Below, in pieces: positions 5,008 through 63,032 of a stretch of DNA of 64,000 bases. The DNA is from Mytilus californianus. Lineage: Eukaryota. A program made the position numbers and the translations under genes. The notes beneath the pieces are model-generated. The model was given only the letters and a program-made list of their open reading frames with translations. It made no database searches and had not been told where the DNA came from. The DNA is taken from contig NW_026262615.1 in the NCBI RefSeq assembly GCF_021869535.1, positions 682,001 through 746,000 of the forward strand. The letters are read 5' to 3'. How positions within the stretch are numbered: the first letter of the stretch is position 1; each line of letters starts with the position of its first letter.

Positions 5008-5083
5008 ATACCAGGCTTATAATTTGGTAATCCAGACGCGCGACTGGTCTACATAAGATTAATCAGTGGCACTCGAATCAAAA
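5008..5083 (-). repeat. Degenerate hammerhead repeat relic (variant A)
   Basis: CCAGGCTTATAAT...CCAGACGCGCG..GTCTACATAAGA..ATCAGTG matches 51586-51655; on the minus strand CTGATGA reads CTGATTA and GAAA is lost. Confidence 0.65.
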
Positions 5084-5895
5084 GATCTGCTAAGTCATTT
5101 CATCATTTAAAGTTGAAAAACATTAATAAATGAATATTCCCAAAACAAATAATAACGGTTAACCATTTAAGCATGCAAAACAAAGTATAAAATAAGCTCA
5201 CCAAAGTTGTATTATACAGTGAGTCATTGTATACGCCTGACGTGCATGTCGTCCACATAGAACTCATCCCTGGCACCCGAATCAAAACATTCAGAAAGAA
5301 GATGAAAATACGAAGTACAAGAGCATTAAAAACTGAATGTAGCAGAAACACAAAGATAATATTTGAATGTAACATTAAGTTATTCGCAGCAACAGTCTCA
5401 CTCTGTAAGATTTGTTAACTTTCCAGTAAAGTTTTCAGCTTATTTGAATATTTTTTCTTACAGGAAAACGTCACTGTTTTTGCAATTACTATAAAGATAA
5501 TGCATCCAAACATATTACATCGACATTTAACAACAAGTCAATGACTTCCGCATAAATGCATTTCTGTATAAATGTAGTGCAGGCCAAGGGGCTAATTGTT
5601 CAATTTTGCAAATAATATTATATATATATCAAGGGTTTATGAGATTCCCTTTGATGGACATGGTCATCGAACTCATTGCTGACGTTGAATACGCTAAAGT
5701 ACTTAGCATTATTGACATGAATATAGTTGACAAAATAATAATGGTAACAAAATTGCTGTTTTATTTTTAGATAAGTAGGTGCTGCGTGTAAGATTATTCG
5801 ACTTGTATAGTAAAATACATTACATTAGTGTTTGACGATGAAAGGAGTCGGACATATAAATTGAAATTGAACAAACTTTGGTAAACTGAATTAAT

Positions 5896-6015
5896 CAAAG
5901 ATACCCGGCTTATAATTTCGATCGCAAAACGCGCGTTTCGTCTATAAATGACTCATCAGTGACATTCAAAAAAAAAAAGTTAAAAAGCCAAATAAAATAC
6001 GAAGTTGAAGATGAG
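5896..6015 (-). ncRNA. Hammerhead-containing repeat (variant A); core intact, stem I damaged
   Basis: Minus strand 5967-5921 reads GAATGTCA-CTGATGA-GTC-ATTTATA-GAC-GAAA-CGCGCG-TT-TTGCGAT. Flanks match the retrozyme body. Confidence 0.7.
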
Positions 6016-6350
6016 GAAAATGATAGTAAATATTCATATTACAATACTTTTTTTTTTAAATCACTGGTTTCTTGTATATAGCACTTTATTATTTCGAAGA
6101 AACATACGTTTACCGATGTATTTTCTAATCTTATAAATAATTTCAAAACATACAAAACATACTCACATGAACTCCAAAAGTAGCTAGACCAATGATAAGA
6201 CATAAGACAATGTCATTTGTTCAGTATTCATCATGATTAATGTATAAATGCTGCAAAACTAAATAGGACAACATGCTAGTAAATAAAATAAATACTTTAT
6301 ATATTTCCTATCTCCGAAGTGCTTTCAAAGATGTGACGCTTAGAAGTTTG

Positions 6351-6395
6351 ACACCAGGGTCGCCTATCGTCTGCATATGACTCATCAGTGTGGAA
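6351..6395 (-). repeat. Degenerate hammerhead repeat relic (variant A)
   Basis: Minus strand CA-CTGATGA-GTC-ATATGCA-GAC-GATA; GAAA is mutated and stem III is lost. Confidence 0.55.
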
Positions 6396-6462
6396 GTCAG
6401 ATAGCTTGCAAAGTTGTTGAATAGTTCTTTAATATAGAGATCTAAACCCAAATATAGAATGA

Positions 6463-6719
6463 GGGGCCTCGGTGGCCGAGTGGTCTAAGTAGTTGAACTA
6501 CTGTATCACTAGCCAATTAACACTGAGGATGTGAGTTTGAATCCCGCACGGGGCAGGTGCACTCGACTCCAATCTTAATTGACTAGTATTGTCAGTTTTC
6601 CTACCGAAGGTCGGTTGTTCTCTCCGGGCACTGCGGCTTCCTCCACCAATAGAAACTGTCTGCCACGAAATAACACAATAGTGTTGAAAGTGGCGTTAAA
6701 CACAAATCAATCAACCAAT
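6463..6719 (+). mobile_element. tRNA-derived SINE (V/Meta-like central domain)
   Basis: Pol III box A TGGCCGAGTGG (6473-6483) and box B-like GTTTGAATCCC (~6534-6544); central TTCTCTCCGGGCACTGCGGCTTCCTCCACC; 3' tail GTTAAACACAAATCAATCAACCAAT. The domain-family assignment is from memory of SINE consensus motifs and is less certain than the SINE call. Confidence 0.8.
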
Positions 6720-7734
6720 ATAAAATGCAAAGCTAATAGAAAGTTTAAAAAAACTATTAAAAGTGACCAAAAACACTCAAGTTCATCTCTATCCTTATAA
6801 CATCAAGGCCAATGTTTAATTTCGGTATACAACATAACTCGATAAATTGATTTACATCCTGGTTAATAATTACTTTTGTTTTATTAAACAGCTTGTTATT
6901 TATTTTGTATGAAGGTTAAAAAAGGGTCATTTAAAAGAAGACAATGTACCTCTGCTTATCTTGTTTGGTACTGTCATCTTGTAAACAAGTCCGTTTAAAT
7001 TCCTGCTCAATTCTCGTAAAAGTACAGGACAGGGTTCATCATTATATCATATCAATATGTTTGTCCTGATAAATATGTAAAGTGTGCATCTTGAAATTAA
7101 AAAAAGGAATTAAATCAGCCTCCAATGTTATAACTGGTGGCACATGTCAGATTAATAAAAAAAATCACCCGTGATAATTTAGGTTAATCTAAGAGAAAAT
7201 AAGGGATTTATAACATAGTAATATGTAACTCATTTGGGTAATTAAATCACAGAAAATTGAGTTTTAAACTTCAGATGCAAATATATAATTGTATTCAAGC
7301 ATGTTTCTCCTTCGTCCTTTGTTTGCTATACCTTTAGTCTTTTCAATTGTTTTGGCTCTTTGACGTTTATATAGTGGTTTTGATTTTCAAATTGTTTATC
7401 TCCAGAAAAATTATTTGTCTGAATGATAATTCCGTACAGGGAAAATTGATGCCGTTTATGTTATTCTTAACTAAAAGAGAAGCAGATATACATTTAAACA
7501 CTAGGTTTGAGGAGTTCTTGAGATCACCACCAATTGTTAATTTGGTTCATGTTGCACAATGTTTAATTTTCTATGTAGTGTTTTGTGAACTTCGAGGTCT
7601 TTTCGTGGTCTGTCGTTTTTCCCCCATGAGATTGTCAGTTTTTGTTCCCTAATGAGGCATGAAAGTGCCCTTGGTATCATCGCATCTTTCTTGTTAGACT
7701 GATCGCTAATTATTACGGTATATAGAAAAAAGCA

Positions 7735-7935
7735 GGGGCCCCAAAATGACTAGTATAAAACAATTCAAACAGGAAAACCAACGACAAACACTTATGAATC
7801 AAATCAAAAAACGACAACCAATGAAACAGGTTCCTGACTTAGGACAGGTGCAAACAAATGCAGCGGGTTTAAATGTTTTAACAGGCGCCAACCTTCACCC
7901 TAAACTGTCATATCAGTGTAACGTTACAACATAGA
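7735..7935. repeat. Interspersed repeat family Y (partial, inverted relative to 35170 copy)
   Basis: Contains CCTGACTTAGGACAGG, GCGGGTTTAAATGTTT and CAGTGTAACGTTACAACATA, the reverse complements of blocks at 36540-36580 and 35420-35500. Confidence 0.7.
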
Positions 7936-7984
7936 TAAGCACATTTACCTCAACGTAGAAGATCAACGTGTTTCTTCAACGATT

Positions 7985-8200
7985 TGCCTTCTACAGCACT
8001 TGAGATCACCGCCTGATTTTGGTAGGGTTCGTGTTGCTCAGTTTTCAGTTTTCTATGTTATGTTATGCATACTGTTGTTTGTATTTTGATCGTTTTGTTT
8101 TTTGTTTCTTTTTTTTGTTGTTTTTTTTTTACCATGGTGTTGTCCGTTTATTTTCGACTTGTGAGTTTGAATGTCCCTTTGGTATCTTTCGCCTCTCCTT
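7985..8200 (+). repeat. Penelope-like (Naiad) 3'-end-derived repeat
   Basis: GAGATCACC...GGGTTCGTGTTGCTCAG...TTTTCGACTTGTGAGTTTGAATGTCCCTTTGGTATCTTTCGCCTCT is the reverse complement of 9512-9670, which directly continues the PLE RT ORF. A more degenerate copy lies at ~7500-7690. Confidence 0.8.
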
Positions 8201-13700: not shown

Positions 13701-13754
13701 GTTGTTTAATGTAATGTATCCGTTTTTATTCTGTAGTTAGTCCCCACTTTGGTT

Positions 13755-14005
13755 TTATCATGTATATCTATTATATAGTCATTTTATAAAATTTACTGTT
13801 TGCAAAATTATAAATTATTCTTAATAATAAGGATGTTCTTGTCCCAGGCAGAAAACCCTGAACGTGTTAGGCGCAACATTTTGGAAGTTTTGGTCCTCAG
13901 TGCTCTTCGGCTATGTACTTGTTATGTCTTTCAAGCTTTTTTTCACTGGATGGTCTTGTGTGGACGAGACGCACGTCTGGCGTATTAAATTTTGAGCCTA
14001 GTACC
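13755..14005 (+). repeat. Diverged retrozyme monomer with inactivated hammerhead
   Basis: Collinear with the reverse complement of 51590-51840; the ribozyme reads CA-CTGGATG-GTC-TTGTGTG-GAC-GAGA-CGCACG-TC-TGGCGTA. Confidence 0.75.
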
Positions 14006-14049
14006 TTTTGTTAGCTATTATTCGTGTGTTTCTTTGTCCTATATGTTCT

Positions 14050-25159: not shown

Positions 25160-25325
25160 AGGCACATGCCTATATACACGAGACAGGTGTTGAACTAGAA
25201 TGGTGTGAATTACACATGATACACGCCTACATCCACCTGTTTGGTCTTTAACTGGAAAAGTGTGAGTTACACATAATATATGATTACATCCACGAGTTTG
25301 GTGTTGAGCTGGATTGGTGTGAATT
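25160..25325 (-). repeat. Three diverged in-frame 57-bp tandem units spanning the GPCR stop codon
   Basis: GTGTGA(A/G)TT recurs at 25203, 25260 and 25317 (period 57). Minus-strand translation: NSHQSSSTPNSWM*, NSHFSS*RPNRWM*, NSHHSSSTPVSCI*. Confidence 0.75.
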
Positions 25326-26435
25326 TTGAACTGAGCATCTTTGATAACTTTCGTTTACCTTACGTCTATAAGTAAAGAAAGCCTTCAATTCTTTTCTGAA
25401 GTACGCACCCGTTACAGAATAGAGAAAGAAATTTATACAATAGTTCAAAAAATATGCAGTCTTGGTAAAGAATAGTATGTTTTGCAAGGTATCTACTTTA
25501 CTACCTGATGAAAATGTTTTCGTTCTTGTTTGGTGAAACTGCTTAAACCATACAACAGCGTAAGGTGAGTTAAAAGCAATAAAACAAATCGAAATTGTTA
25601 TAAGTATTACAGTAAACTCAAACCGAATGATGCTTTCTTCAGTAATAAAATTGCATTTCCGATGTTGTCTGCTCCTTTCTATCAATGTACGAATTATCAG
25701 TATGTTAAGAGTTGTTATGACAAAAAACGGTAGGAATGTTATACACACTGCAAATACGCAATCGTAAATAAATGAAACCGTCACAAGGTCTGTTTTCGGG
25801 AGACACCATGGGGTTTGATCAGGTCCAATATGGCGAACTTCATTTAGCCAAGGCCTTATTGAGGAAATGAATATTGATATCAGCACTAAAATTACAACAA
25901 TTTTCTTTGACGAATTAATATCACATATGCCCCTTCGTTTGAGTGGATGACATATTCCTATGTACCGTTCCAAAGTAAAACTTGCCACCAGCCATGTTGA
26001 GAGAAATCGAGAGGCGTATGACAAGAAAATTGTAAGTTGACAAATTCCATTGACGTCTAAAAATTCTGCAATGTTGCTACGGAATTCCTCACGTAATCCA
26101 CGCTTCACCCATTCAATGAGAACAAAAAATATCAAAGCTAGAAGATCTGCTGTCGACAGAGCAGCTAAATAGACACTAGCTGATAATTTTCTCATGTTTT
26201 TGGTAACAAATACCATTAGTGATAAAACGTTTCCCACAATTCCTACGATGAATATAATAGGTGTAAAATAGGTGAAGAAAACTAGTCCTTCGTGGCTGAT
26301 CTCAGTTGAATTGTTTAACTCCCCAAAACTGAGAAAAAAATCGTTGTCATTGCATGGTATTTGAGTACTGTTTGAACTGTTAAACCTTAAGCATGGGTCA
26401 TTCTTTGTTTCGTTTTCCTGAAATAATAGAAGCAT
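25284..26435 (-). CDS. Class A (rhodopsin-like) peptide GPCR, FMRFamide/CNMamide-receptor-like, 383 aa
   Basis: Uninterrupted ORF with seven hydrophobic segments and family motifs: N-terminal N-glycosylation sites (NET, NSS, NST), TM1 GIVGN, TM2 YLAALSTAD, TM3 Cys and TLERYIGICHP, TM5 LPF, TM6 CFIAFNSPY, TM7 INFFLY, helix-8 FRKEL. The annotated ATG overlaps a TTTCAG that could instead be a splice acceptor. Confidence 0.93.
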   Translation of the reverse strand: MLLLFQENETKNDPCLRFNSSNSTQIPCNDNDFFLSFGELNNSTEISHEGLVFFTYFTPIIFIVGIVGNVLSLMVFVTKNMRKLSASVYLAALSTADLLALIFFVLIEWVKRGLREEFRSNIAEFLDVNGICQLTIFLSYASRFLSTWLVASFTLERYIGICHPLKRRGICDINSSKKIVVILVLISIFISSIRPWLNEVRHIGPDQTPWCLPKTDLVTVSFIYDCVFAVCITFLPFFVITTLNILIIRTLIERSRQHRKCNFITEESIIRFEFTVILITISICFIAFNSPYAVVWFKQFHQTRTKTFSSGSKVDTLQNILFFTKTAYFLNYCINFFLYSVTGAYFRKELKAFFTYRRKVNESYQRCSVQNSHQSSSTPNSWM

Positions 26436-30321: not shown

Positions 30322-30624
30322 CATGCGTCCGATGCTCTTTTCTGGATTTACCTCCACCAGGAACGCTCAAAACCGAATATTTGAAAGCCAATGATGAATA
30401 ATAAAGACCAAAACAATTGAAGAGATATATAACCAAAAAGACCTAAACAAATAGCCAAATCAATTTAAGGTCAACTTTGCCTGAGGAAGTTGAAAGCTTA
30501 GATTCTTTATAATTTATAAATTTATAAACAGACAATTTTAAAAAGATTTGTTATTAATCATGTCAGTACCGAAGTAATTACTACTGAGCTGGTGATACCC
30601 TCGGAGACTGATAGTCCAACAGCA
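30322..30624 (-). repeat. Retrozyme monomer with variant-B hammerhead (core mutated)
   Basis: Minus strand GAGCGTTC-CTGGTGG-AGG-TAAAT-CCA-GAAA-AGAGCA-TC-GGACGC. The body is collinear with the 51650-51900 unit, including the GCTGGTGATACCCTCGG block. Confidence 0.65.
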
Positions 30625-44707: not shown

Positions 44708-45154
44708 AGTACAATAGGTACAATTAATTTTACTGTACATCGGTAAACTACTGTTGCCTAAATTTCGTATAACAAGCTTAGTTAAAAATGAGTTGAAGCA
44801 CTGATACACATACGAAGTATATGATTGTTAATTGGAGACTAAAGTACGTGCTGATGCTGACCTACGTAACCGATTCTTATTATTTTAGACACTCGAATCG
44901 TGCTTACTGGCAATTGGTATTACACGGTTATATTATTCACTAGGAAAGGACATTTAATTAAAATTAAATGTAACCTTTTCACCGAGGCAAACCAAAACAA
45001 AATAAACCCGAAAAAGACACGTGTTAATGAATAATACCGATGACAACAGATACAGAATGAAATTGAAAATTGTTTCGAAATAAGAATCATTCGAATGCAT
45101 GCGCTTAAAAAGAGGCGGAAAATACGAAGGGGATAAGCAAACTGTCTTTGATTC

Positions 45155-45238
45155 GAGGGTCACTGATGAGTATTTTGTAGACTGAACGCGCGTCTGTCGT
45201 ACAATGTTTTCAACCTGGTATCTATGATGAGTTTATTT
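45155..45238 (+). repeat. Degenerate hammerhead repeat (variant A)
   Basis: GAGGGTCA-CTGATGA-GTA-TTTTGTA-GAC-TGAA-CGCGCG-TC-TGTCGTA; GAAA and stem II are mutated. Confidence 0.7.
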
Positions 45239-45984: not shown

Positions 45985-46205
45985 TATACGCTAGAGGTGC
46001 GTTTCGACTCATCAGTGAGGCTCGAATCAAACAAGTTAAAACGGCCAAATAAGAAACGAAGTTGGAGAGCATCCACAAATTCCGAAAGGTTTTTGTCAAA
46101 TACAGCTTAGGTTATCTATTCCTGGGGTTGAACATCCTTAATATTTCGAAAAATTCAGTTTTATAAACAATAAACTTATAATCATGACATATCAATAATA
46201 ATTCA
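45985..46205 (-). repeat. Retrozyme monomer with stem II deleted
   Basis: Minus strand CA-CTGATGA-GTC-GAAA (10 nt of the loop and 3' stem II missing); the body matches 51650-51830. Confidence 0.75.
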
Positions 46206-48349
46206 CGAAATTGAAATATGATTATGCCCCCTGTTATTACCATATTAGAATTATCCAAACGAAAACAATAATGTTCAATATAACCATAGATCTAACTGTA
46301 TCATTCATATTACTCTCCAGACGCATTTGTTTGTTCTATTTACCATGATGTTTTACTTAGCAAATGACAAAAGCTGAATATAATTTTATCTAACCGCTGC
46401 GACAGCCCCAAAATATCATTCATACGATGTTTTAAAGTCTTTTTCATCGGTTTCATGAAATCATTTAAACGGCATGCAAGCCAGTAAGAAAGGACAAACC
46501 GATAATGGTCAATAATGAACATGCTAGATATTTGACATATCAATGATTATTAAGCCCGAGAGTTAAAAACGTAAAATATGCCATAAAATATCTTTCGAAT
46601 TAATTACACATCAAATCAGAAGCAAATGGTTATATTCCTAAACCAATGAAACTCAAAACATAAAAATATGGTTTTCTAAGCAACAGCATATGTTTCTAGA
46701 ATAGCATTATTAAGGTTTCCTTAGTACAACACGTTTAAAAGCCAATCATTTGAAACAGCAGAGAGTTACAAAAAAAACAGTTTATGATATGTGAAATATC
46801 TAGTAGTACGTATATTGTATTCCTATATGTATCTTAGAGTCAGGATATTATACACATATTTCTCACAAATTGACAATAGACAACAATGTGTATTCATATC
46901 AAAAACAACTTAACAATTCTAACATATAAGAAAGCGTATTAACAAAATGCAATTTGCCTTAATCAAAATATCAATGAGAAAATGAAAAACGATTATCTAT
47001 GAAACAACAATCCACAACAAACACCAAAGGACAAGGTTACTTACTTCTATAGCTACTGTACTATACCATTTGTATGCATACACACATCATATAAAAAAAG
47101 AAGTATTCGAGGTAAGCCTGAACATGATGAATGAAACGACAACAACAAGATTGTCATGCATGAAATCCATTTGGAGGTCAGTGTTCTATATTTTACAAGT
47201 GTCTAGTATTTGATACGTCAAGCTTGTAATCACATGGACTGTTGACAAGATTGTAGTAGCAATGGTTATTGTAGTACCTTTGCATAGCTGATACATTTTC
47301 TCCTTTTTGGTATTCATTTTTAGGATTTACATCAAAAGTGATATCAAACTTCCAAAAATTAGAAATAAATTTATTTGCAAGAAGCACGAATTTTTAATGT
47401 AGCTTTAAACACGTACTGATTGCTGAATGTCCTTTTTTTTCTTATCCAGATGGAGTCATATAAAAGTATAAACTCGTCTATTTATTACGTTAGAGCAAAA
47501 TCTATCTGGTAAAGTAAGTAGTGTCATATCTTTATTTGTGTCATGGGAAATGTTGTTTTCAATAACCATGTTATATTCACATTAGGTGTTACGCACACTA
47601 TACTAACTAGCACTGTATTGAATTTTAAAGGAAACATGGGACACCAAACACGAATTTCAAACACTAACAAAATGTAAACTAATTACAAACACTTAAAAAA
47701 AATGCAAACTAACGTTTTAATTGAACTAGAGAGTTTTAATACAATCTTAAAAGAACTCTGCGTTTTGCAATCGCAGCATGTTCTCAAATTTTATTTAATA
47801 AACCGGTATGTATTGTACTTAGATTTTGAATATTACTTTTATTTGTTTACAAATTAATTTTGTTATTAGTAAATAATAAATATTATTGCTATACACAAAT
47901 GTACATTTGCGGTACGACCAATCTTTCGATGCCTTTATTTTGGCATTGCACATGGTCATATGTTATCTGACATCTTAACACTAAATCACTTGAATGTTGG
48001 ATATGTACTATTTCAGTTTTAGATACATATTTTTCTTTCTGAAATGTGACGTGCGCGATTTTTCTTTTTTTTTTCTTCAGTTTTTGTTTATTACCTTGCT
48101 CTGTATCGTCCTTAGATGAATGATTTATGAAATGTAAACATCGATAAATTACATCAACTTCTAACTTATTCAAGGATTGGAAATCGTAAGTCGACGAAGA
48201 AAGACAACACCATGAATACTAAAAAAATCATGGAAAAAGAGATAAGTTGAAAACACATCTTTGTTACACAGCATCAGAATATCGAGTGATCTCAACATTT
48301 TATTAATTGAAATTTGCAAAAGAAATATTAAAGAATAATTATTTTGAAA

Positions 48350-49310
48350 AATACACCCTATGTTCTGATTCCTATTAGATTAGAACTTTAAAATGACCCA
48401 AAATCCATCCCATGTTCTAAATCCTACTCATATACTGGCTTTAAGATGACCAAAAATACATCTCATGATCTAATCTTAATCATATACTAATCTTAAAATG
48501 ACTCAAAATACATCTCATGTTCTGATCCTACCCAGATACTAGTTTTAAAATTACCAAAATACATCTCATGTTCTGATCCTACTAGGATACTAGTTTTAAA
48601 ATGACCAAAAATACATCCTATGCTTTGTTCCTACCAAGTCACTAGTTTTAAAATGGCCAAAATACATCTCTTGTTCTGATCCTACAAAGATAAAAGTTTT
48701 AAAATGACCAAAAATACATCCCATGTTCTGATCCCACTCAGATACTACTTCATGAATGGCGAAAAGTACATATCATGTTTTGAACCCACTCAGATACATT
48801 TATGTACTAGTTTTAAAATGACCCAAAATACATCCTATGCTCTGATCCTACCCAGATACTAGTTTTAAAATGACCAAAATACATCCTATGCTCTGATCCT
48901 ACCCAGATACTAGTTTTAAAATGACCCAAAATACATCCTTTGCTCTGATCCTACCCAGATACTAGTTTTAAAATGACCCAAAATACATCCTATGCTCTGA
49001 TCCAACCCAGATACTAGTTTTAAAATGACCCAAAATACATCCTATGCTCTGATCCTACTCAGATGCATGTTTCAAAATTACTAAAAATACATCCCATGTT
49101 GTGATCTTATTCGGATACTCTTTTAAAAATGACAAAAACTACATCTCGTGTTTTGAACCTACTCTGATACTGTTTTTCAAATCACAAAAAGTACATCCCA
49201 TGTTGTGATCTAACTCCGATTTTGTTCTTAATATGACGAACGGTACATTTAATGTTTGAACCCCATTCCGATACATTTTTTATAAAATGACTAACTCCCA
49301 TGTTCCAATA
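48350..49310. repeat. 52-bp minisatellite, roughly 18 units
   Basis: Unit TACTAGTTTTAAAATGACCCAAAATACATCCTATGCTCTGATCCTACCCAGA; starts at 48805, 48857, 48908, 48960, 49012. Units diverge toward both edges. Confidence 0.95.
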
Positions 49311-51602
49311 TCATTCTGATTCTTTACTCTCAATATTTTCCGATGGTCTTTAATGAAAAATGTTCTCATTGACATTTTACCACATCTGCTTTTTAATTTT
49401 TTTTTTTTTTTTTTTTCAATGACGAAAAGTACATCCAAGATTTTGATTTTACTCAGAAAGTGTCTTAACATTGGTATTCACTTAGAATCGTCTTTAAGAT
49501 TTGTGTTTTTTGTCGCATGGGCAGAAAGATCGCCTCACAACTTCGTCGACCTTATTAATTTTTAAGATGTTCTAACGCAATTTTCTCTGATATTATAAGA
49601 CAGAAATGATGCTCTCGGCAGATAAACTACATTAACATTTCTAGTCATCATGCGGGAAGTACATTTACTTGATGAAGTAACAGGGTTATAAGTCTCCCAT
49701 AACATTTTGTTTTGTGTCCGGTAATCAGACATAATTATTGGTGTTTTACGTTATATCCTGGATAACCTAAGCTGTATTTTGCAAAACTAGAACCAAATGC
49801 TCTTGAACTTTGCATTCTATTTGGCCTTTAAATTTCTTTAAATTATAAGCTTGATATCTTTGAAGTGTTGTATTTGTATTTTTATTTATTTTGTTTATTT
49901 GTTGGAGATATATAAGTGTTGATGTGAGTGTTTGTCTCTATATTTCGATTAATCAATTAAAAAAGGCACGAGTATTTTGGTAAAAACTGGCTTTTTAACG
50001 ATCTCTTGCAGATGTATTTACGTAGATATTGATACTAAAACAATTCATCTGACTTAAAAGTATATATATTGGTACATCGTTAGACCTTTTCCTGACATTG
50101 ACATGGTCGTATGGAGTTCCTTAGGATTCGACGTATCAAGGTTTGCAGTAGGCGTCTTGTCGTTGGTTACTATCTGTCGTATTTGTAATTCGTTTCCTAA
50201 TATGCCAAAAACCTTGACACGGACCTTTGCCTTTGAATTGTTTAATTTTATATTATGTCGGGTTCTTTGATAGCTGACTTTATGGTATGGATGTTGCTCG
50301 TTGTTGAAGACAGTACCGTCACATATATTTGACAAAATGGAAAATGGTCTCAATGATAACCCATATCAATGAAAAATCATATCCGGCAGTATATAGAAAA
50401 GATAACATTAAAATTTGAGATCATACGGATGATAAACTAGATAAACGTGACGAAAACAATAGTAAGATATAATTTTAATGACAAACTGATATCACAATAC
50501 AACTGTTTTCCTTTTCTTTTCTTTTGCACTAAAGGAGAGAATATACTAAGAGGACAATACAAAATTATACTCCAACAAATACAACCACACAATAGTCCAA
50601 AAAAAATGACGAAACAACAAACATCAATTACAAAAAACTACCTTGAAAATGAAAGATGAAACGGGCAAATCCATGGGATGAAATCGGATGCTCTTTCATT
50701 TGTAAGAATTTCCTAGTGATACCTGTTGATAAGAAAATCAGAACAAAGGGACCAAAGGAACATGTTTGATAGATATTATTTTTTTCTAGTGCACTATAAA
50801 AAGAAAGGGAAAAATCAATTTCTCTACATAAATGTAAAAAAAAAATATGAAAGAATGGAGATGTGGGAAAACGAAATTCGAATGCACCCGATATTTTAAT
50901 GTACAAAGGTTTATGAATTATATAAAGGGTAATGATTTCTGAAGTGGTTAACATTGTCAAATTCGAAAGATCATTACGCATTTTAATTCTTCAGGATTTT
51001 ATGGATAAACATAGATGACTATTATATAAATTTCATTTATACTAAGTCGTCTGTTATGTTTCTGTTAGACACGTATTTACGAATGTATAGGTGAAAGCAT
51101 TGACTTTGGATGATATATAGCTTATTACGTTTTCGTAGATCGTGAAAGTATATCTAAAGAATTCAGATATGACGATAAAGGATTTTATACATTTTAATTG
51201 AAGAGACTACCGTCGTGCCTTAATATAACCTGGTTTGGCCTCAACGTGTGACGAATATAATAGTTTATTTAATAGACTATCATAATATAAAGTGTTGTGT
51301 TAAAGTACGATGGTAAATTTGATGTTTACGTAAAAACACACCTAGACTTCTAATTTTCAGTACCTGTGTCACTCGCCTAATAATAAACATATGATACAGT
51401 ATTAGTGTTAGAAAAATGTGTTTTTGAAAAAAAGAAGAAATGTTGTACTAATTCAACTGTAAATAAACCTGTTAATATCATCAAAATTATTTCACTTCCT
51501 TAAATATAGTCAAAATGGTGCTAACAAATAGCACACGCCAAGGTAAATTCCAAAAGGGGATGTCCATAAATAGTTATCAAAGGTACCAGGATTATAATGT
51601 AA

Positions 51603-51649
51603 TACGCCAGACGCGCGTTTCGTCTACATAAGACTCATCAGTGACGCTC
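51603..51649 (-). ncRNA. Minimal type I hammerhead ribozyme (variant A), intact
   Basis: GAGCGTCA-CTGATGA-GTC-TTATGTA-GAC-GAAA-CGCGCG-TC-TGGCGTA; predicted cleavage after GUC, between 51610 and 51609. Confidence 0.9.
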
Positions 51650-51957
51650 AGATCAAAATAGTTATGAAGCCAAACAAGTTCAAAGTTGAAGAGCATTGAA
51701 GACCAAAAATTCCAAAAAAGTGTGCCAAATACGGCTAAGGTAATCTATTCCTGGGATAAGAAAATCCCTAGTTTTCCGAAAAATTCAATGTTTTGTAACA
51801 GGAAATTTATAAAAATGACCATATAATTGATATTCATGTCAACATCGAAGTGCTGACTACTGGGCTGGTGATACCCTCGGGGACGAAACGTCCACCAGCA
51901 GCGGCATCGACCCAGTGAGGAAAAATGGTTATCAAAGGTACCAGGATTATAATTTAA

Positions 51958-52004
51958 TACGCCAGACGCGCGTTTCGTCTACATAAGACTCATCAGTGAC
52001 GCTC
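51958..52004 (-). ncRNA. Minimal type I hammerhead ribozyme (variant A), intact
   Basis: Identical to 51603-51649; predicted cleavage between 51965 and 51964. Confidence 0.9.
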
Positions 52005-54744
52005 AGATCAAAAGAGTTTTTAAGCCAAACAAGTACAAAGTTGAAGAGCATGGAGGACCCAAAATCCCAAAACAATGTGCCAAATACGGCTAAGGTAATC
52101 TATTCCTGGGATAAGAAAATCCTAAGTTTTCCAAAAAATTCAATGTTTTGTAAAACTTGAAAAAAATTCAAACGTTAGACTACAATATATGTCAACAAAC
52201 TGAACGAATGGGAAGCAACTGTCATATTTCTTACTTCGATTTTGCATTTCCTAAAGTAAATGGTGGGTTAAACCTGGTTTAAAAGCCAGCAAAACCTCTA
52301 ATTTGTACGGCAGTTGTTTATAAATCCGTTATATTGGCAAAATCAAGTGACCAAACCAAACAAACTTGATTGGTTATTGTGAAAATATTTGGGATCCAGC
52401 AGCCACAACTGTGTAAAACATACATCAAAGACATACGACACAACTGATTATAAAATTCAAACAAGCAAACAAGAAAATCTGACAAAGACGCCGGCAGAAA
52501 AAACTATATTAAGGCAGTCGTAATAGTCAAACTGCAATATAAGCTTTCTGTGTGCAGTATTTTAGACAATAGTGGACAAAATATCAATTAGGTGTGAAAA
52601 TAAATACACTGTCTTAATCTCTTGTCAGGGTATTATCTTTTGCATTACTCTGTGCAATTACTGGAAATGTTTATGATTGTTTCCTCTCAAGACCTAAATT
52701 GATGTTACATTAGTGATAGGAATTACTGTACCATGAAATCTGATTAATGCAAATAAACCATCATAATGTGTCATTTACATTATGCAAGTTCCAATACACA
52801 GGTGGACTGACTATCAATAATAGCAATTCGATCGGAGAATACCATATCGTCACAGCAGATAAAACGCATTATAGAATCAAACGATCTAGAAGAACAGGGA
52901 ACTTGACTTGAAGATATTTTTAACATGACAGAAAAGGTTTTTGAAAGTCGTGTTATGAGGTTATCAGAACATTATATTTAACGTACCTGCCCAAGCTTTC
53001 TCGTATAAATAAACAGAGATGTAAGAACATGTCAATGAGCCAGAAAAATGCTTCAAAATGGATGTATGATATGTTTACTATCCAAATTCGGTCTCCATTT
53101 GCCTTATAAAACAATTGATTTTACCAAATTTAGGCTACTTAAACTTAAAGATCAATTATCTTCAAATTTCTTTTTTACATTAAATCGTGACTTTTGGAAA
53201 CACTCTTCAAAGCAACGGTCCTCCTTTTGATATAGATATAGTCAAAAAATATAACAGCGAACATATATGCATGTTTAACCTCATGTTTACAGCACAATTC
53301 ATTTTCCAACAACTTTACCACAAATTACGTGTTGTTTAACCTTTAAATGTGCGTTTTAAAACATGGTTTTAGATCTATTTAATAGACATTGGGTTCGCGT
53401 GACGTCTCATACTTCTTCTTTTTTCTTCTTGGTACACTTCCGAATGTAGATAAATCTGTCTACATAAAATATAGACTTGTTAATTAAAAGCTATATACAT
53501 ATTCCTACACGATTAATACATAGATATCAATATCCGAAATTGGTCAAATATGAGACAAATGCCAACAATATTGATCTAAACTATGTTTTTTTAAATATTG
53601 GCAGAAGCTCTATGAATTATGTGAAGGGTAGCTATCATTAGAGAAAATACACATAAGTATACTAGTCGTTGATTACGATCCCCGTTCGTGAAATGCAGAA
53701 AAAAAATTAGTATATCCCTGCGAATGAATTGTATTCTACAAAAATATAATGTTGAACTATTGAACTTGTGGATAAATATTAATTACGTATTTATCAATAT
53801 CATTGATGATTAGCCACTTTTCTGTTCTGTTTTCATTGAAAATGTATCTATATAAATGCATAACTAAAAGCATATATGATTCGTTTTAAATCTAATAGGC
53901 TAATTTAATTGCATAGAAAACAGAAGGGTATATTAAAAGACACAGTAGAGACAACAAACCTTTCTCTTGATCTAAATTTTACAAGAGCATAAAGCTGTAG
54001 TAAATCTTTTCGTATTCATTAGTGAAACATAAAAAAAGATTCAGCATGAAATATTTATTTCAAATATTATTGTAAAAATGTTACACGGAAAAAGATATAG
54101 TTAACTATAGATAACACAACTGGATTGTATGATGCTCTAGTATCGTAACTTTAACCTGGAAGTCATTTATTTACAATTAAGCAGTAGTAGAAACAATACC
54201 TGTTCGTAATATAAACATAGGAACAGTGGTATGATTACCAATAAGACAACTTTTCAACAGAAAACCAAAGGACTGATTTTAACTAAAACAATAAATAAAA
54301 ACACAACAGATGACTACATGCGATAACCATTGAAGGTAACGATCTTGTTTTTGTACAAACATAATGGTTGTGTCAAGTTTTAGAATGATAGTAAGCATTC
54401 GACACTCTCAAAACCTTAGGACTGTGCTGCAACAGAAAAACACAACAACACATTGCACTTCATATGAACAAAATTGAACACTAAAGTCAAAGTGTGTCTT
54501 TTGTTCCTTTTGTTTATTTGTGTAGGCCTTATTTATACACCAAAAAAAATTAACATACTATCCTTTAATGTTTCCATAAAACTATCTGAACTGCTATTTT
54601 GTGCAACTAATTATAAAATATCTTATTGTGTTGCTAAACTATATTGGTACCTTAAATGTATTACAACATGTACAACGATGGATTGTGGGCAATGACATTT
54701 TATGAATGAACCACTTGCCTGATGAATGAAGTAATTGTCTCCTT

Positions 54745-56035: not shown

Positions 56036-59000
56036 TCAAAGTTGAGAAAAACGCTTGGTACTTTTTATATACTTTTGTACAGATAGAAAAACACTATAAT
56101 TTTCTTCAGAACTCAAAGACTCATCACCAAAGAGCAATAACTCAATTGTAATATTGACAGCAAAAACATTGATTTCATTTATCATTAAAAGCCTTTGTGA
56201 TGAAAAATTGTTACAATATAATAAATAATGTTTAGCATCTTCATTGATGAAGCCACATAAACATTTGGCATCTTGTACTAAGTTTGCATTAAACAAATCT
56301 GATTGAAGAGTGCTACAATGGTTTCGCAACCTTGCATGTAATACAGATAGTAAGCGGTCTCCAGAGTAAAAATGTCTCGGAGATTTTTTATTCTTATAGT
56401 ATAACATATGCAATTTGCTTTTAAATAATGAAAATGTAGGAATCTGTCTAATAATAATATCTAAAGTGTTCCACAATGTTATGGATGCTGGGAAATAAGA
56501 ATGTTGATAAACCGACAAACGATTCACTGGAATAGTGATATTGTGTCTGTTTCGTAAATTGTAATTACTAATATCAGATACAAATTCTGGAACCAAGTCA
56601 TGTAGATAATCTGGAACCTGATTGTTAATAATTTTATAAAACATGGCCAACTTTTTTACCTCCCGCCTTACGCTTAATTTTTCCCATCCCGTCTCCCTGT
56701 AAATAGCGTTTCGGCTAGCATAACTTGATAATCCAGTAACAATGCGAGCAGCCTCGATTTGAATATTTTCTATTCGATCAGAATTTATGTTCCCACAATT
56801 ATCCCAAACTTCTGATGAATACTCAAGTATCGGACGAAAAAAAATCATATAAATTTTTTCCAAATATTCCCTTTTTAATCGATATTTTAGTTTGCGTAAA
56901 ACATTAAGCTGCTTCGAAGTTTTCTCAATCAGTTTATCAACATGCTTATTCCATTTACAATCATTACTAAATATGACACCTAGATGTTTGTGCGCACTAA
57001 CTGGTTTCAATGTAGCACCACCAAAATCAAAAGTAATATCACTGTATATATTTTTCAAACTGAATATCATAATATCAGTTTTATTAGGATTAAACTTCAC
57101 TAGCCATTTTTCTGACCACTTACTTAAATAATCAAGATCTCTACTGATCGAACTTTTTAAAGTGGATTCATCAGGTGCAGTATGACCTATTGAAGTATCA
57201 TCTGCAAAAAGCCTTCCGAATCCAGACATACCATCAGCTATATCATTAATGTATATTAAAAACAACAAGGGTCCTAATACCGACCCCTGGGGCACACCAG
57301 CGTTAAGTTTTCCAATGTTTGATAATGAATCTTTTATGACAACTCTCTGAGATCGTCTAGACAAGTAACTTTTCAACCAACATAGCAAGTCTCCTTTTAT
57401 ACCATATTTTTCAAGTTTATGTAATAAAGCCTTAATCCAAACAGTATCAAATGCTTTGCTTATATCAGCAAATGTAATGCTTGTTAAAAGCTTTTCATTT
57501 AGTGCACTCAAAATTTTGTTATACAATTCTATCAACTGATGCGAAGTTGAGTATCCTGGAATAAATCCGGATTGATACTTGTATAATAGTTTATTTTCAT
57601 GTAAATGGTTAAAAATATTTTTGAAAACAATCTTTTCTAAGACTTTAATCACACATGACAATAATGAGACTGGCCTGTAGTTAGACGGTAATGACTTGTC
57701 ACCACTTTTGAATAAGGGAATAACATGTGCAATCTTCCATTGGTCTGGAAATATTTTATCATTTAAAGATTTGTTAAAAAGTAGACATAATGGTTTGGAA
57801 ATTTCATTTCTAACAGCAAGTAACATTCTGTTGCTATCGATATCTGGTCCAACAGCTTTATTAACATCGAGCGTTGAAAGAATATCAAGTACATCTTGAT
57901 CACTAACTACAATTTGTGAAATAAAATCAAGACATCGGTCTTCAAATTCCGGCAAATCTTTACTAGCGCCATCTAAATTAGAAATTGAACAAAAATATTT
58001 ATTTAAAATGTCGGACTTTTCGGTTCCCTCATACGCAAGTTTAAAATTATGATCAGGGTCCGTCATGGGTGGTAAATCATGAGACGGTGTATCACTTTTA
58101 ATTAACATGTTAACCGTTTTCCAGTACTGTTTACAGTTTGTAACTTTTAGTTCATCTAAATTTTCATTAATACTGGTAAAAAAATGTTTTTTAGCTTGCT
58201 TTTTCAAGTTATTTACTTTGTTCCTTTGTTGTTTAAATTTCTTTTCTGCGGATGTACTATTTGAGCGAATAAAAATATTACGAAGCCTGTCGCGTTTTCT
58301 CGTTTCACGCCGCAAATTCGAATCATACCAAACTTTATCGTCACATCTTATAGTTACTTCCCTTGTAGGTATACACTCGGAGGCTATATTAAGAAATGAA
58401 TTCGTGAAATTAGTCGCAGCAACATGAACGTCACTCGTATCAGAAATTAAATATTCCCAATTTGTTTCAACTACTTTTTGTTTCATAAGGTCATAATCAC
58501 CTTTTTTATAATCCCATATCAATCTATTATAAGTTCGTCTTTTACTAAAACCACAATCAATTGTGACGTATGTTCCATCATGATCACTAATACCTCTATC
58601 AAAAGATATTGTGTCTTTATCTAAAACCGTTATCGAATCAGTGACTAAAATAGGATCAAGTAAAGACGTGCTACCTGTTCGTGTGTCAAAATGAGTAGCT
58701 TTGTCAATTATGTTAACAAGGCCATTGATGAAAAAAATATCTCTTATATTTGACGGTAGATCTGACATAAAGTTTTTATTCAGGTCACCTAAGCAAATTA
58801 TGCAATTATTTTCATCCAGGGCATTTTTCAACATTTGATCAAAATACTGCCAGAAATAAAGTGAAGATTGCCGTTCCGACCTATAATTGATGTTTATCAA
58901 TATTGATCGCAATTTGGTTTTTAACTCAAACCACATACTCTCAAGTTGGCAATTCTCCAAATCATGTCGACGAGTTATGCGAACATAACTTTTATAATAC

Positions 59001-59452
59001 ATAATAATGCCACCCCCATGAGAATTTCTATCTTTTCGAACTGGTATTTCAAAACCAGATATATATAAATCAGAATCTGTAATATTTGAGTCTAAATGGG
59101 TTTCTGTCAAGAATACGACATCGTAATCTTCAATAATATCGACAATATAATTCAGTTTATTTCTAAGGCTTCTTATATTACCATGGAAAATTGACAATGT
59201 TTTCTCAGATATTTCTGGTGTGCGCTCAGGACCCGGGTTCGGTTCGATGTCACCACATATTAGCAACAAACATAATAACAGTATGTAAAATGAAATCATA
59301 TTAGCAGAAGATCTGTATAAATTAAAAATACATATTTTGAGTCTTGAAACATTCGTAAATAAAACGGCAAGTAATTCATACACTGAGAACGATACAAATG
59401 TTTTTCTCAAACAACCCAGACTTATCTTGTGATAAAACAGTCCTATTGTCAT
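56036..59452 (-). CDS. LINE ORF2: 2A-like peptide + APE endonuclease + reverse transcriptase + Cys/His tail, 1138 aa, uninterrupted
   Basis: GDIEPNPGP (residues 67-75); APE motifs HGNIRSL, LTETHL, GGGIIMY, LGDLN, SDHDG; RT motifs KAVGPD, NYRPVSLLS, DISKAFDTV, GVPQGSVLGPLLFLIYIND, LFADDT, HLGV; CLCGFINEDAKHYLLYC. Confidence 0.95.
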   Translation of the reverse strand: MTIGLFYHKISLGCLRKTFVSFSVYELLAVLFTNVSRLKICIFNLYRSSANMISFYILLLCLLLICGDIEPNPGPERTPEISEKTLSIFHGNIRSLRNKLNYIVDIIEDYDVVFLTETHLDSNITDSDLYISGFEIPVRKDRNSHGGGIIMYYKSYVRITRRHDLENCQLESMWFELKTKLRSILININYRSERQSSLYFWQYFDQMLKNALDENNCIICLGDLNKNFMSDLPSNIRDIFFINGLVNIIDKATHFDTRTGSTSLLDPILVTDSITVLDKDTISFDRGISDHDGTYVTIDCGFSKRRTYNRLIWDYKKGDYDLMKQKVVETNWEYLISDTSDVHVAATNFTNSFLNIASECIPTREVTIRCDDKVWYDSNLRRETRKRDRLRNIFIRSNSTSAEKKFKQQRNKVNNLKKQAKKHFFTSINENLDELKVTNCKQYWKTVNMLIKSDTPSHDLPPMTDPDHNFKLAYEGTEKSDILNKYFCSISNLDGASKDLPEFEDRCLDFISQIVVSDQDVLDILSTLDVNKAVGPDIDSNRMLLAVRNEISKPLCLLFNKSLNDKIFPDQWKIAHVIPLFKSGDKSLPSNYRPVSLLSCVIKVLEKIVFKNIFNHLHENKLLYKYQSGFIPGYSTSHQLIELYNKILSALNEKLLTSITFADISKAFDTVWIKALLHKLEKYGIKGDLLCWLKSYLSRRSQRVVIKDSLSNIGKLNAGVPQGSVLGPLLFLIYINDIADGMSGFGRLFADDTSIGHTAPDESTLKSSISRDLDYLSKWSEKWLVKFNPNKTDIMIFSLKNIYSDITFDFGGATLKPVSAHKHLGVIFSNDCKWNKHVDKLIEKTSKQLNVLRKLKYRLKREYLEKIYMIFFRPILEYSSEVWDNCGNINSDRIENIQIEAARIVTGLSSYASRNAIYRETGWEKLSVRREVKKLAMFYKIINNQVPDYLHDLVPEFVSDISNYNLRNRHNITIPVNRLSVYQHSYFPASITLWNTLDIIIRQIPTFSLFKSKLHMLYYKNKKSPRHFYSGDRLLSVLHARLRNHCSTLQSDLFNANLVQDAKCLCGFINEDAKHYLLYCNNFSSQRLLMINEINVFAVNITIELLLFGDESLSSEENYSVFLSVQKYIKSTKRFSQL

Positions 59453-62600: not shown

Positions 62601-62715
62601 ACACACTCTACGGGCTTCACTAACAGGGGTATGCTCCTTACACAAAAGTTGATAAAAGAGTTGTGATTAGAAATGATTACAATTGACAGTCTGGCCTTTT
62701 AAACTTTTTTTATTT

Positions 62716-62780
62716 GACCGTAGCTCATGAGTCTTTTGTAGACGAAACGCGCGTCTGGCTTACAAAATTTCATTCCTGGT
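62716..62780 (+). repeat. Hammerhead repeat (variant A) with a G5 core mutation
   Basis: GACCGTAG-CTCATGA-GTC-TTTTGTA-GAC-GAAA-CGCGCG-TC-TGGCTTA. Confidence 0.7.
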
Positions 62781-63032
62781 AAATATTTATAAAATTGCCT
62801 TTCAATACCATCATTGTCATGAAAATTGTTTGGACTGGTATTGTGAAAATAATTGTATAAAGTTCGAAATTGCATGTTCGTTACGTAAGGGCGTCACTGT
62901 TTGTGATCTACTGTGGTGTCTCTCGTTGATGGAAGATGTTCGTTGTTGTTCTGCAGTTTGCAGGTTGTGTCGACTATTATATTATTTGTTTGTGCGTTTC
63001 TCTGTTATAGTGTTCTTGCGTGTGTTTGTGCT

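What the first reader, a model, noticed from the sequence alone, without database searches (positions are those of the whole stretch)
51573..52153. Head-to-tail retrozyme dimer with two perfect hammerhead ribozymes, predicted to release a 355-nt circularisable RNA
Seen: a 355-bp unit repeated about 1.6 times. Each copy has, on the minus strand, stem I GCGTCA/TGGCGT, core CTGATGA, stem II GTC-TTATGTA-GAC, GAAA, a self-complementary stem III (ACGCGCGT) and a GUC cleavage triplet. Established: tandem 170-400 nt non-coding repeats carrying minimal type I hammerheads (non-LTR retrozymes) occur in metazoans including mussels, yield circRNAs and are thought to be mobilised by Penelope-like RTs; minimal hammerheads with palindromic stem III work as dimers. 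Inference: a minus-strand transcript would self-cleave at 51965/51964 and 51610/51609 and release an exact 355-nt monomer. This is the best-preserved copy of the family in the window.
Basis: partly seen in the sequence, partly recalled or inferred. Interest (0 to 1): 0.85.

Follow-up and report, generated by a model that had tools for sequence, protein, structure and literature searches.

The report
Known mussel hammerhead retrozyme copy
This is a real but ordinary genomic copy (1.65 head-to-tail units with two intact self-cutting hammerhead RNA motifs) of a small non-coding jumping element already shown in Mytilus mussels to make abundant RNA circles; this copy looks like a silent retro-insertion.

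Summary
Window 51568-52153 holds 1.65 head-to-tail copies of a 355-bp unit. Two identical type I hammerheads lie on the minus strand (51959-52002 and 51604-51647). Predicted cuts at 51965/51964 and 51610/51609 would release exactly 355 nt.

The ribozyme differs by one loop-2 base from the Mytilus galloprovincialis Mg353 retrozyme hammerhead, which was shown to self-cleave and form circRNA (Cervera and de la Pena 2020). That paper's primer 110R matches the unit perfectly.

The genome holds 1,025 exact copies of this 44-nt ribozyme and about 3,600 copies of a 32-nt stretch specific to this family.

RNA-seq of the same species label gives 700-3,100x, strand-biased depth over the unit and about zero over the upstream flank. 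At this copy's own variant positions the reads carry the family-majority letters. So the family is expressed, but this locus shows no sign of it.

A paralogous empty site proves the 586 bp is an insertion, into a T4/A4 run. Sampled copies share a fixed 3' end about 42 nt past the cleavage site, have variable 5' truncations and lack long target duplications.

I found no link to a helper reverse transcriptase. This scan has already reported retrozymes many times in this genome.

The parts
51568..52153 (-). Whole retrozyme insertion: 586 bp, 1.65 units. It is 5'-truncated at unit position about 167 and ends at unit position about 42.
   Evidence: The empty paralogous site L056 shows the two flanks contiguous.
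51610..51964 (-). Full 355-nt unit bounded by the two predicted cleavage sites. It is the RNA monomer that a minus-strand transcript would release.
   Evidence: The unit differs from the family majority at 14 of 355 positions.
51965..52153 (-). Upstream 5'-truncated unit (unit positions 167-355), including the first hammerhead.
   Evidence: 93% identical to the full unit. (11 differences from the family majority).
51568..51609 (-). 3' tail: unit positions 1-42 repeated after the second hammerhead, ending ...GATAACTATTT. This is the family's constant 3' end.
51959..52002 (-). Hammerhead ribozyme 1 (type I). The predicted cut lies between 51965 and 51964.
   Evidence: RF00163, 33.0 bits, model positions 1-45..
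51604..51647 (-). Hammerhead ribozyme 2 (type I), identical to ribozyme 1. The predicted cut lies between 51610 and 51609.
51852..51916 (-). GC-rich central hairpin module (about unit positions 48-113), conserved between this family and the Mg353-type sister family. It contains the site of published primer 110R.
   Evidence: 0 mismatches at 51852-51880. (near-identical block in the sister unit). (it pairs in the circular fold).
52152..52157 (.). 5' junction of the element with the target A/T run. The run of four A at 52152-52155 (plus strand) begins the filled-site AAAACTTG, which corresponds to AAAACCTG of the empty site. 2 nt are ambiguous between element and target.

Best explanation
Window 51568-52153 is a retro-inserted, 5'-truncated 1.65-unit copy of the Mytilus non-LTR retrozyme. 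It belongs to a 355-nt subfamily that is about 81% identical to a genomic unit of the Mg353-type sister family.

Mechanism of the family:
- A transcript of the ribozyme strand folds two type I hammerheads. Each cuts after GUC and leaves a 5'-OH and a 2',3'-cyclic phosphate.
- The unit-length RNA is closed into a circle by a host RtcB-type tRNA ligase.
- A retrotransposon reverse transcriptase copies an RNA that is continuous across the 355-to-1 junction, meaning a circle or an uncleaved multimer. It starts at a fixed site about 42 nt 3' of the cleavage site and stops at variable points. This gives DNA copies with a constant 3' end, zero to several full units, and a ragged 5' end.

What is shown here:
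- the anatomy and intact ribozyme cores;
- that the element is an insertion (empty site);
- the family copy number and architecture;
- abundant, strand-biased family RNA that is continuous across the cleavage/ligation site.

What is taken from the literature, for the near-identical Mg353 hammerhead: self-cleavage, circularity and ligation by RtcB.

What is inferred: a circular template, the identity of the reverse transcriptase, and that this locus itself is transcriptionally silent and decaying neutrally.
For: - Hammerheads: RF00163 matched full length at 33.0 bits (E 6e-6) twice. There is an exact 32-mer at both sites, against 0 expected.
- Published relative: the Mg353 construct in the supplement of PMC7229834 has the same ribozyme apart from one loop-2 base, with the same marked cut site. 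Self-cleavage, circRNA northern blots and RtcB ligation are reported there. Primer 110R matches with 0 mismatches and 109R with 1.
- Sister family: it is 81% identical over the whole unit.
- Copy number: 1,025 exact 44-nt ribozymes and 3,604 hits to the family tail 32-mer, with 0 control hits.
- Insertion: the paralog L056 has the two flanks adjacent, with AAAACCTG between them.
- Architecture: 34 of 35 sampled insertions end 28-55 nt past the cleavage site, most at 40-44, and so contain the 355-to-1 junction near their 3' end. Their 5' ends are scattered. The sister family ends at the same place.
- RNA: depth is 700-3,100x on the unit against about 0 on the flank 52156-52400. First mates lie on the plus strand 5-10 times more often in three runs. 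No pile-up of read ends occurs at 51964/51965.
- Non-coding, low GC: the longest ORF is 54 aa and GC is 39.7%.
Against: - The Rfam score is 1 bit below the curated threshold.
- Cleavage of this exact sequence, with loop 2 UUAUGUA, has not been assayed.
- Short reads cannot tell circles from uncleaved precursors.
- The RNA strand assignment assumes a dUTP-type library.
- Locus-level expression is not supported. There are no reads across the upstream junction. At this copy's variant positions, 93-99% of reads carry the family-majority letter at most positions where a single alternative dominates (51845, 51927, 52014, 52052, 52066, 52124, 52131 and 52144; 83% at 51902 in X21).
- The circular fold is not more stable than shuffled sequence (z = -1.1).
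- No helper reverse transcriptase was linked to the family.
Confidence: 0.88

Rival explanations
1. The same element, but this locus is itself an active source. It would be transcribed from an internal promoter in the partial upstream unit and would contribute 355-nt circles to the pool.
For: Both hammerheads are intact. Two ribozymes bracket a full unit, which is the minimum needed for release. A few dozen reads per run are at least 99% alike (33-46 of 2,500-8,000). By the definition in the 2026 preprint, an array with a hammerhead in every repeat counts as 'active'.
Against: Depth is zero in the upstream flank. Reads carry the majority letter at this copy's variant sites in 93-99% of cases at most positions where a single alternative dominates. 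The copy is 3.9-5.8% diverged from the family majority and ranks 59th of 68 sampled units. With about 9 private changes in 456 non-ribozyme bases, having none in the 88 ribozyme bases is expected about 18% of the time, so there is no sign of selection.
Confidence: 0.08
2. A local DNA-level tandem duplication (a satellite seed formed by unequal crossing-over or replication slippage) of a single inserted unit, rather than a multi-unit reverse transcript.
For: The two units are only 93-94% alike. Within-element identity across the family (0.961) barely exceeds between-element identity (0.950). The 2026 preprint discusses expansion by unequal crossover.
Against: The same layout (partial unit, n full units, 42-nt tail) recurs at dozens of unrelated loci with different 5' ends. 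The whole 586 bp is absent from the paralogous site as one block. Young arrays have near-identical units (0.994 and 0.986).
Confidence: 0.03
3. The terminal repeat (pLTR) fragment of an autonomous Penelope-like element, not an independent non-autonomous element.
For: PLEs carry type I hammerheads near their 3' ends and are mostly 5'-truncated. Xenopus retrozymes are related to PLE pLTRs.
Against: There is no ORF in or next to the element, and the flanks are contiguous in the paralog. The unit has no similarity to the young 755-aa and 911-aa PLE families sampled, apart from separate nearby retrozyme insertions.
Confidence: 0.02

Closest known systems
Mytilus galloprovincialis retrozyme Mg353 (Cervera and de la Pena, NAR 2020, PMC7229834)
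   Same: It has the same hammerhead apart from one loop-2 base, the same cleavage site, and a unit of about 350-390 bp. It shares the conserved central hairpin (primer 110R site), the low GC content, a copy number in the thousands, and abundant RNA. The window unit is 81% identical to a genomic unit of the same genome that carries Mg353's loop 2 (UUUUGUA) and matches that paper's primer 109D.
   Different: This is a 355-nt subfamily with loop 2 UUAUGUA and a different stretch just 3' of helix I (ATTAAATTATAATCC... in place of ATATACAAAATTTAGTCC...). Activity of this exact variant has not been assayed. The paper stresses tandem repeats, whereas in the part of the tail-motif hit list that I inspected most copies are solitary and 5'-truncated.
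Amphibian satellite 2 / axolotl retrozymes (dimer-acting type I hammerheads)
   Same: They are type I hammerheads in tandem units of about 330-350 bp, with a palindromic helix III region, and give circular and linear RNAs.
   Different: Amphibian helix III is weaker (1 bp plus a tetraloop) and needs dimeric constructs. The mussel type is described as 2 bp plus a tetraloop and cleaves from a construct with one ribozyme.
Penelope-like element pLTR hammerheads
   Same: The hammerhead sits close to the 3' end of the DNA copy, followed by a short tail. Copies show frequent 5' truncation and partial tandems, and often have no clear TSD.
   Different: The retrozyme has no RT/GIY-YIG ORF, and no sequence is shared with the PLE families sampled here. 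None of the 35 sampled junctions lies in a (TA)n run, which is the preferred target reported for Naiad PLEs and, in earlier notes of this scan, for other retrozyme families of this genome.
SINEs mobilised by LINE/PLE target-primed reverse transcription
   Same: They are non-coding, have a fixed 3' end and variable 5' truncation, are dispersed in thousands of copies, and insert at T/A-rich nicks with microhomology.
   Different: The template must be continuous across the ribozyme junction (a circle or a multimer). Copies can hold several units. There is no poly(A) or microsatellite tail and no Pol III boxes were tested.
Plant LTR retrozymes
   Same: Hammerhead-bounded non-coding RNA that is circularised and retrotransposed.
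   Different: Plant elements use type III hammerheads inside LTRs, have a PBS and PPT, have 4-bp TSDs, and use Gypsy machinery. None of these features is present here.

Membership tests
Hammerhead ribozyme type I (Rfam RF00163) | Conserved catalytic core CUGANGA ... GAAA ... and a cleavage triplet UH (here GUC) | tested here: met
   Both copies read CUGAUGA, GAAA and GUC in the correct order and spacing.
Hammerhead ribozyme type I (Rfam RF00163) | Three helices around the core, with helix I open (type I topology) | tested here: met
   Helix I has 6 bp (2 of them G-U). Helix II has 3-4 bp. Helix III is ACGCGCGU, which is 2 bp plus a tetraloop, or 8 bp in a dimer. The Rfam alignment covers model positions 1-45.
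Hammerhead ribozyme type I (Rfam RF00163) | Score at or above Rfam's gathering threshold (34 bits) | tested here: not met
   The score is 33.0 bits, 1 bit short, with E 6e-6 locally and 2.4e-4 for the whole window. This is a curation cut-off, not a structural feature.
Hammerhead ribozyme type I (Rfam RF00163) | Mg2+-dependent self-cleavage | not testable with these tools
   Self-cleavage was shown for Mg353, which differs by one loop-2 base. It has not been shown for this sequence.
Metazoan non-LTR retrozymes | Type I hammerhead inside head-to-tail repeats of about 170-400 bp | tested here: met
   The unit is 355 bp and there are 1.65 copies here. Arrays of up to 8 units occur elsewhere in the genome.
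Metazoan non-LTR retrozymes | Non-coding, GC below 45-50%, no LTR/PBS/PPT | tested here: met
   The longest ORF is 54 aa and GC is 39.7%. The 'repeat' is only the overlap of 1.65 units. PBS and PPT motifs were not searched for explicitly.
Metazoan non-LTR retrozymes | Expressed as abundant unit-length RNA of the ribozyme strand | tested here: met
   At family level, depth is 700-3,100x with a 5-10:1 strand bias, and the flank is at about 0. This is not shown for this locus.
Metazoan non-LTR retrozymes | The RNA is circular | tested here: inconclusive
   Reads are continuous across the cleavage site and no read ends pile up there. That is compatible with circles but also with uncleaved precursors. 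The 'goes back 355/356' joints only reflect my permuted reference. Circularity is published for the sister family.
Metazoan non-LTR retrozymes | Dispersed multi-copy element that inserts into new loci | tested here: met
   There are 3,604 tail motifs on all large contigs. An empty paralogous site exists for this copy.
Non-autonomous derivative of Penelope-like elements | Sequence homology of the unit to the pLTR or 3' end of a resident PLE | tested here: not met
   Eight PLE loci were sampled (755-aa and 833-911-aa families among them). The only matches are separate retrozyme insertions outside the PLE ends. The sampling is small, so this is weak negative evidence.
Non-autonomous derivative of Penelope-like elements | PLE-type insertion scars: 5' truncation, a hammerhead near the 3' end plus a 30-40-nt tail, and variable or absent TSD | tested here: met
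   These scars are also compatible with LINE-type target-primed reverse transcription.

The most novel reading that the evidence does not exclude
DNA copies of two diverged mussel retrozyme families (81% identical) all end at the same internal point, 42-47 nt 3' of the ribozyme cut, at a ..TATTT motif. Nearly all contain the 355-to-1 junction. The one empty site available shows insertion into a T4 run.

This would mean that reverse transcription starts at a fixed site on a circular (or uncleaved multimeric) RNA, immediately after the hammerhead domain. It would be primed by an A-rich nicked target end pairing with the U-run, with the hammerhead domain acting as the recognition handle for the reverse transcriptase.

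None of the 35 sampled junctions lies in a (TA)n run, unlike other retrozyme families and the Naiad PLEs noted in this genome. The helper may therefore be a different reverse transcriptase from the one usually assumed.
Probability: 0.3. Interest if true: 0.45.

Novelty: already known. Interest (0 to 1): 0.15.

Why it matters
For annotation, it shows that a whole abundant ribozyme family (1,025 identical motifs) sits 1 bit under Rfam's hammerhead threshold. Default scans of mussel genomes therefore miss it.

Biologically, the element is a textbook case of the published route from retrozyme to circRNA and adds no new principle.

The modest added value is threefold. First, there is empty-site proof that such a dimer is a single insertion event. 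Second, there is family-wide evidence for a fixed start point of reverse transcription just after the hammerhead domain. Third, the target (a T-run, not (TA)n) differs from that reported for other retrozyme families of the same genome. This bears on the open question of which reverse transcriptase moves animal retrozymes.

Tried and rejected
- Rfam at gathering thresholds gave no hit. The E-value mode was needed.
- Tandem Repeats Finder did not list the repeat, because there are fewer than 2 copies.
- The 'goes back 355/356' joints in read laying looked like circle junctions at first. They only join unit positions 166 and 167, because my reference was a permuted unit. They say nothing about circles.
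- A search for long target-site duplications in 35 insertions gave a mean longest shared string of 4.1 nt, against 3.6 +/- 0.16 for mismatched pairs. So there is at most a few nt of microhomology or TSD.
- Apparent '5' end exactly at the cleavage site' in five copies was an alignment artefact. They start a few nt inside the ribozyme.
- Two paired copies that looked LTR-like (L031, L044) are a 1.8-kb tandem segmental duplication and a 1,959-nt perfect inverted duplication. There is no ORF between them.
- Helper search: 12 GIY-YIG loci have no Rfam hammerhead. Eight larger PLE loci have no homology to this unit within the PLE ends. The neighbouring LINE's 3' region has no similarity to the retrozyme's 3' domain (score 17 against 19 +/- 2.4 for shuffles).
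- The circular fold of the monomer is not unusually stable (-79.8 kcal/mol, z = -1.1).
- Selection on the two ribozymes at this locus is not supported, once variants shared with other copies are separated from private ones.
- I did not align the printed Mg353 sequence numerically, because that would have required typing a long sequence. I used a genomic sister unit by reference instead.
Full report
**Observation**

Read on the minus strand, window 52153->51568 holds one 5'-truncated unit, one full unit and a 42-nt start of a third, all from a 355-bp repeat.
- The repeat finder gives 51568-51798 against 51923-52153: 231 nt, 94% identical, spacing 355.
- The 32-nt hammerhead string from CTGATGA to GCGCGTC occurs without mismatch at 51965-51996 and 51610-51641 on the minus strand. 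None is expected by chance.
- This places the scissile bonds at 51965/51964 and 51610/51609. The released unit is 51964->51610, exactly 355 nt.
- Rfam's type I hammerhead model aligns full length (positions 1-45) to 51959-52002 and 51604-51647 at 33.0 bits, with E 6e-6 in a 1.7-kb search and 2.4e-4 over the whole window.
- That score is 1 bit under the curated threshold of 34, so the default scan is blank.

**What it is**

The supplement of Cervera and de la Pena (NAR 2020, PMC7229834) prints the genomic Mytilus galloprovincialis retrozyme construct Mg353 with its cleavage site marked.
- Its ribozyme reads GAGCGTCACTGATGAGTCTTTTGTAGACGAAACGCGCGTC|TGGCGTAT.
- The window's ribozyme differs at a single base, in loop 2 (UUAUGUA in place of UUUUGUA).
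- That paper's primer 110R matches the window at 51852-51880 with no mismatch, and 109R matches both ribozymes with one.
- The paper reports about 5,000 such hammerheads in 350-390-bp repeats and co-transcriptional self-cleavage at about 0.1 per min.
- It also reports abundant circular RNA in gonad and mantle. Circularisation by RtcB reached about 30%, against about 1% for self-ligation.
- In this genome (1.65 Gb, 175 contigs) I found the Mg353-type sister family through a loose-end consensus from the RNA reads. It gives 538 pattern hits.
- A 363-nt sister unit is 81% identical to the window unit. The ribozyme and a GC-rich central hairpin are nearly invariant between the two.
- The element is therefore a subfamily member of an already described family.

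**Family size**

- The exact 44-nt ribozyme occurs 1,025 times in the genome.
- A family-specific 32-mer from the tail occurs 3,604 times with up to 2 mismatches.
- The reversed-pattern controls give 0.
- In the part of the tail-motif hit list that is shown, most places stand alone rather than 354 bp apart. Most insertions therefore hold less than one unit plus the tail, and two-ribozyme copies like this one are a minority.

**It is an insertion**

Both flanks of the element match a paralogous segment on the same contig (C35:11373723-11374218, 89-94% identical).
- In that paralog the flanks are adjacent...gtccat AAAACCTG aaaaattcaaacg....
- The window reads ...gtccat AAA-[element]-GT AAAACTTG aaaaaaattcaaacg...
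- The 586 bp therefore entered an A4 run (T4 in element sense) as one block. Between 0 and 4 nt of duplication or microhomology are possible, and there is no deletion.

**Architecture across copies**

I fetched 37 loci and defined 35 independent insertions.
- The 3' end is nearly constant at unit position 40-44 (...CCTGGTACCTTTGATAACTATT(T); a sub-variant reads ...GATAACTAATTAG).
- The 5' ends are scattered over the unit, between positions 6 and about 349.
- Between zero and seven full units lie between the two ends.
- Long TSDs are absent. The longest shared junction string averages 4.1 nt, against 3.6 +/- 0.16 in mismatched controls.
- None of the 35 junctions lies in a (TA)n run.
- Solitary copies of the sister family end at the equivalent place (...GATGAGTTTATT(T), 43-48 nt after the cut).
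- Because nearly every copy contains the 355-to-1 junction near its 3' end, the template cannot have been a linear, ribozyme-cleaved monomer. It was an RNA continuous across the junction: a circle or an uncleaved multimer.
- A fixed 3' end with ragged 5' ends is the signature of target-primed reverse transcription. This agrees with the published retrozyme model and adds a defined start point.

**Age and selection**

Over 68 full units the mean majority fraction per column is 0.974.
- The ribozyme columns (0.976-0.988) are slightly more uniform than average, as are some other segments.
- The window's full unit differs from the majority at 14 of 355 positions, and the partial unit at 11 of 189.
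- About 9 of these 25 changes are private to this copy.
- At that rate, having no change in the 88 ribozyme bases has a probability of about 0.18. The intact ribozymes need no selection at this locus.
- Units within one insertion are barely more alike (0.961) than units of different insertions (0.950). A few young arrays reach 0.986-0.994.

**RNA**

I laid four RNA-seq runs of the same species label on window 51799-52400, at 90% or greater likeness.
- Depth is 700-3,100x over the element and essentially zero over the unique upstream flank 52156-52400. The edge is sharp, at 52153/52154.
- In three runs, first mates lie on the plus strand 5-10 times more often. For the usual dUTP chemistry this means the RNA is minus-strand, that is, ribozyme sense. 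The fourth run is unstranded.
- Depth is continuous across 51964/51965, and the tool flags no place where molecules begin or end. Cleaved linear ends are therefore a minority, as the published northern blots showed.
- Short reads cannot separate circles from uncleaved precursors.
- Only 33-46 reads per run are at least 99% alike.
- At this copy's variant positions, 93-99% of reads carry the other letter at most positions where a single alternative dominates (51845, 51927, 52014, 52052, 52066, 52124, 52131 and 52144; 83% at 51902 in X21).
- So the family is strongly expressed, but nothing shows that this locus is.
- Loose-end consensuses at 51957 and 52004 belong to the Mg353-type sister family, which shares only the ribozyme with this one.

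**Structure**

- The circular monomer folds to -79.8 kcal/mol with 58% of bases paired. This is not different from dinucleotide shuffles (z = -1.1).
- The isolated 44-nt ribozyme in its catalytic fold scores -3.4 kcal/mol.
- Two copies co-fold into a double hammerhead with an 8-bp intermolecular helix III at -29.5 kcal/mol, against 2 x -9.2 for the monomers.
It is not required, because Mg353 cleaves from a construct with one ribozyme.

**Helper reverse transcriptase**

The literature proposes PLEs. A 2026 preprint shows that Xenopus retrozymes are related to PLE pLTRs. I could not link this family to a helper.
- Twelve GIY-YIG loci have no Rfam hammerhead.
- Eight larger PLE loci, including very young 833-911-aa and 755-aa families, show no homology to the unit inside the PLE ends.
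- A different hammerhead family (ACATCA-CTGAAGA-...) does sit next to PLE ORFs in L015, L062 and L063.
- The APE-type LINE 4 kb away (56036-59452) shares nothing with the retrozyme's 3' domain.

**Verdict**

This is a correct reading of a known element. This scan has already reported retrozymes in this genome many times: 142 notes hold the words 'hammerhead retrozyme'.

Novelty is 'already known' and interest is low. There are three small additions:
- empty-site proof that the dimer is one insertion;
- a fixed +42 start point for reverse transcription, shared by two families;
- a T-run target in place of (TA)n.

Noticed in passing
window 56036-59452 (-): An intact-looking 1,138-aa ORF with an Exo_endo_phos (APE) endonuclease domain and an RVT_1 domain. 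It is a LINE-type non-LTR retrotransposon 4 kb from the retrozyme, on the same strand. Its 3' region has no similarity to the retrozyme's 3' domain.
   Followed up: partly
window 25284-26435 (-): A 383-aa ORF with a rhodopsin-family 7TM receptor domain (PF00001, E 1e-22). It is probably a single-exon GPCR gene.
   Followed up: no
window 48348-49262: A 52/103-bp tandem satellite with about 16 copies at 79% identity, 2.3 kb from the retrozyme.
   Followed up: no
window 52154-52453: The flank on the element's 5' side belongs to another abundant repeat: 2,972 first-look candidates, with typical copies 77-81% identical. The retrozyme therefore landed in or beside an older repeat. The weak snoR64 hit at 52139-52240 (24 bits against a gathering score of 45) is probably spurious.
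   Followed up: partly
window 62690-62790 (+), 13738-14023 (+), 46006-46205 (-), 5915-6011 (-), 30555-30624 (-), 45147-45194 (+): Decayed, 5'-truncated relics of the same retrozyme superfamily. The copy at 62724-62755 is the Mg353 type (loop UUUUGUA) with a dead core (CUCAUGA). The copy at 13738-14023 has lost both CUGAUGA and GAAA. The two whose 3' junctions were read (62690-62790 and 13738-14023) end about 35-45 nt after the former cleavage site.
   Followed up: partly
window 51918-51922 (unit positions 43-47): A hypervariable spot in both the RNA reads and the genomic copies, with substitutions and 1-nt indels. It lies immediately beyond the point where all DNA copies end (unit position about 42). 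RNA depth dips here.
   Followed up: partly
L044 (G000:C121:107985400-107991200): A 1,959-nt inverted duplication at 100% identity with 1,815 nt between the arms, each arm carrying a retrozyme copy. It is either a very recent palindromic duplication or an assembly artefact.
   Followed up: partly
L062 1-4000, L063 about 4888, L015 (G000:C132:102983000-102992000 and others): A different hammerhead family (ACATCA CTGAAGA GACATTAATTGTC GAAA TCCGGAT A TGGTGT, also with a palindromic helix III) forms a 540-bp array next to an inverted pair of 833-aa PLE ORFs. It also lies 0.65-1 kb downstream of PLE ORFs at two other loci, in one case directly after a (TA)7 run.
   Followed up: partly
G000:C110:55838761-55862602 (L016, L057): A head-to-tail array of a Penelope-like element with a 3,927-bp period. 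Each unit has an open 755-aa frame containing a GIY-YIG domain. No canonical hammerhead was found by my motif scan of L057 or by Rfam in L016.
   Followed up: partly
genome-wide (G000): The family's hammerhead scores 33.0 bits against Rfam's gathering score of 34. All 1,025 identical copies are therefore invisible to default Rfam annotation.
   Followed up: yes
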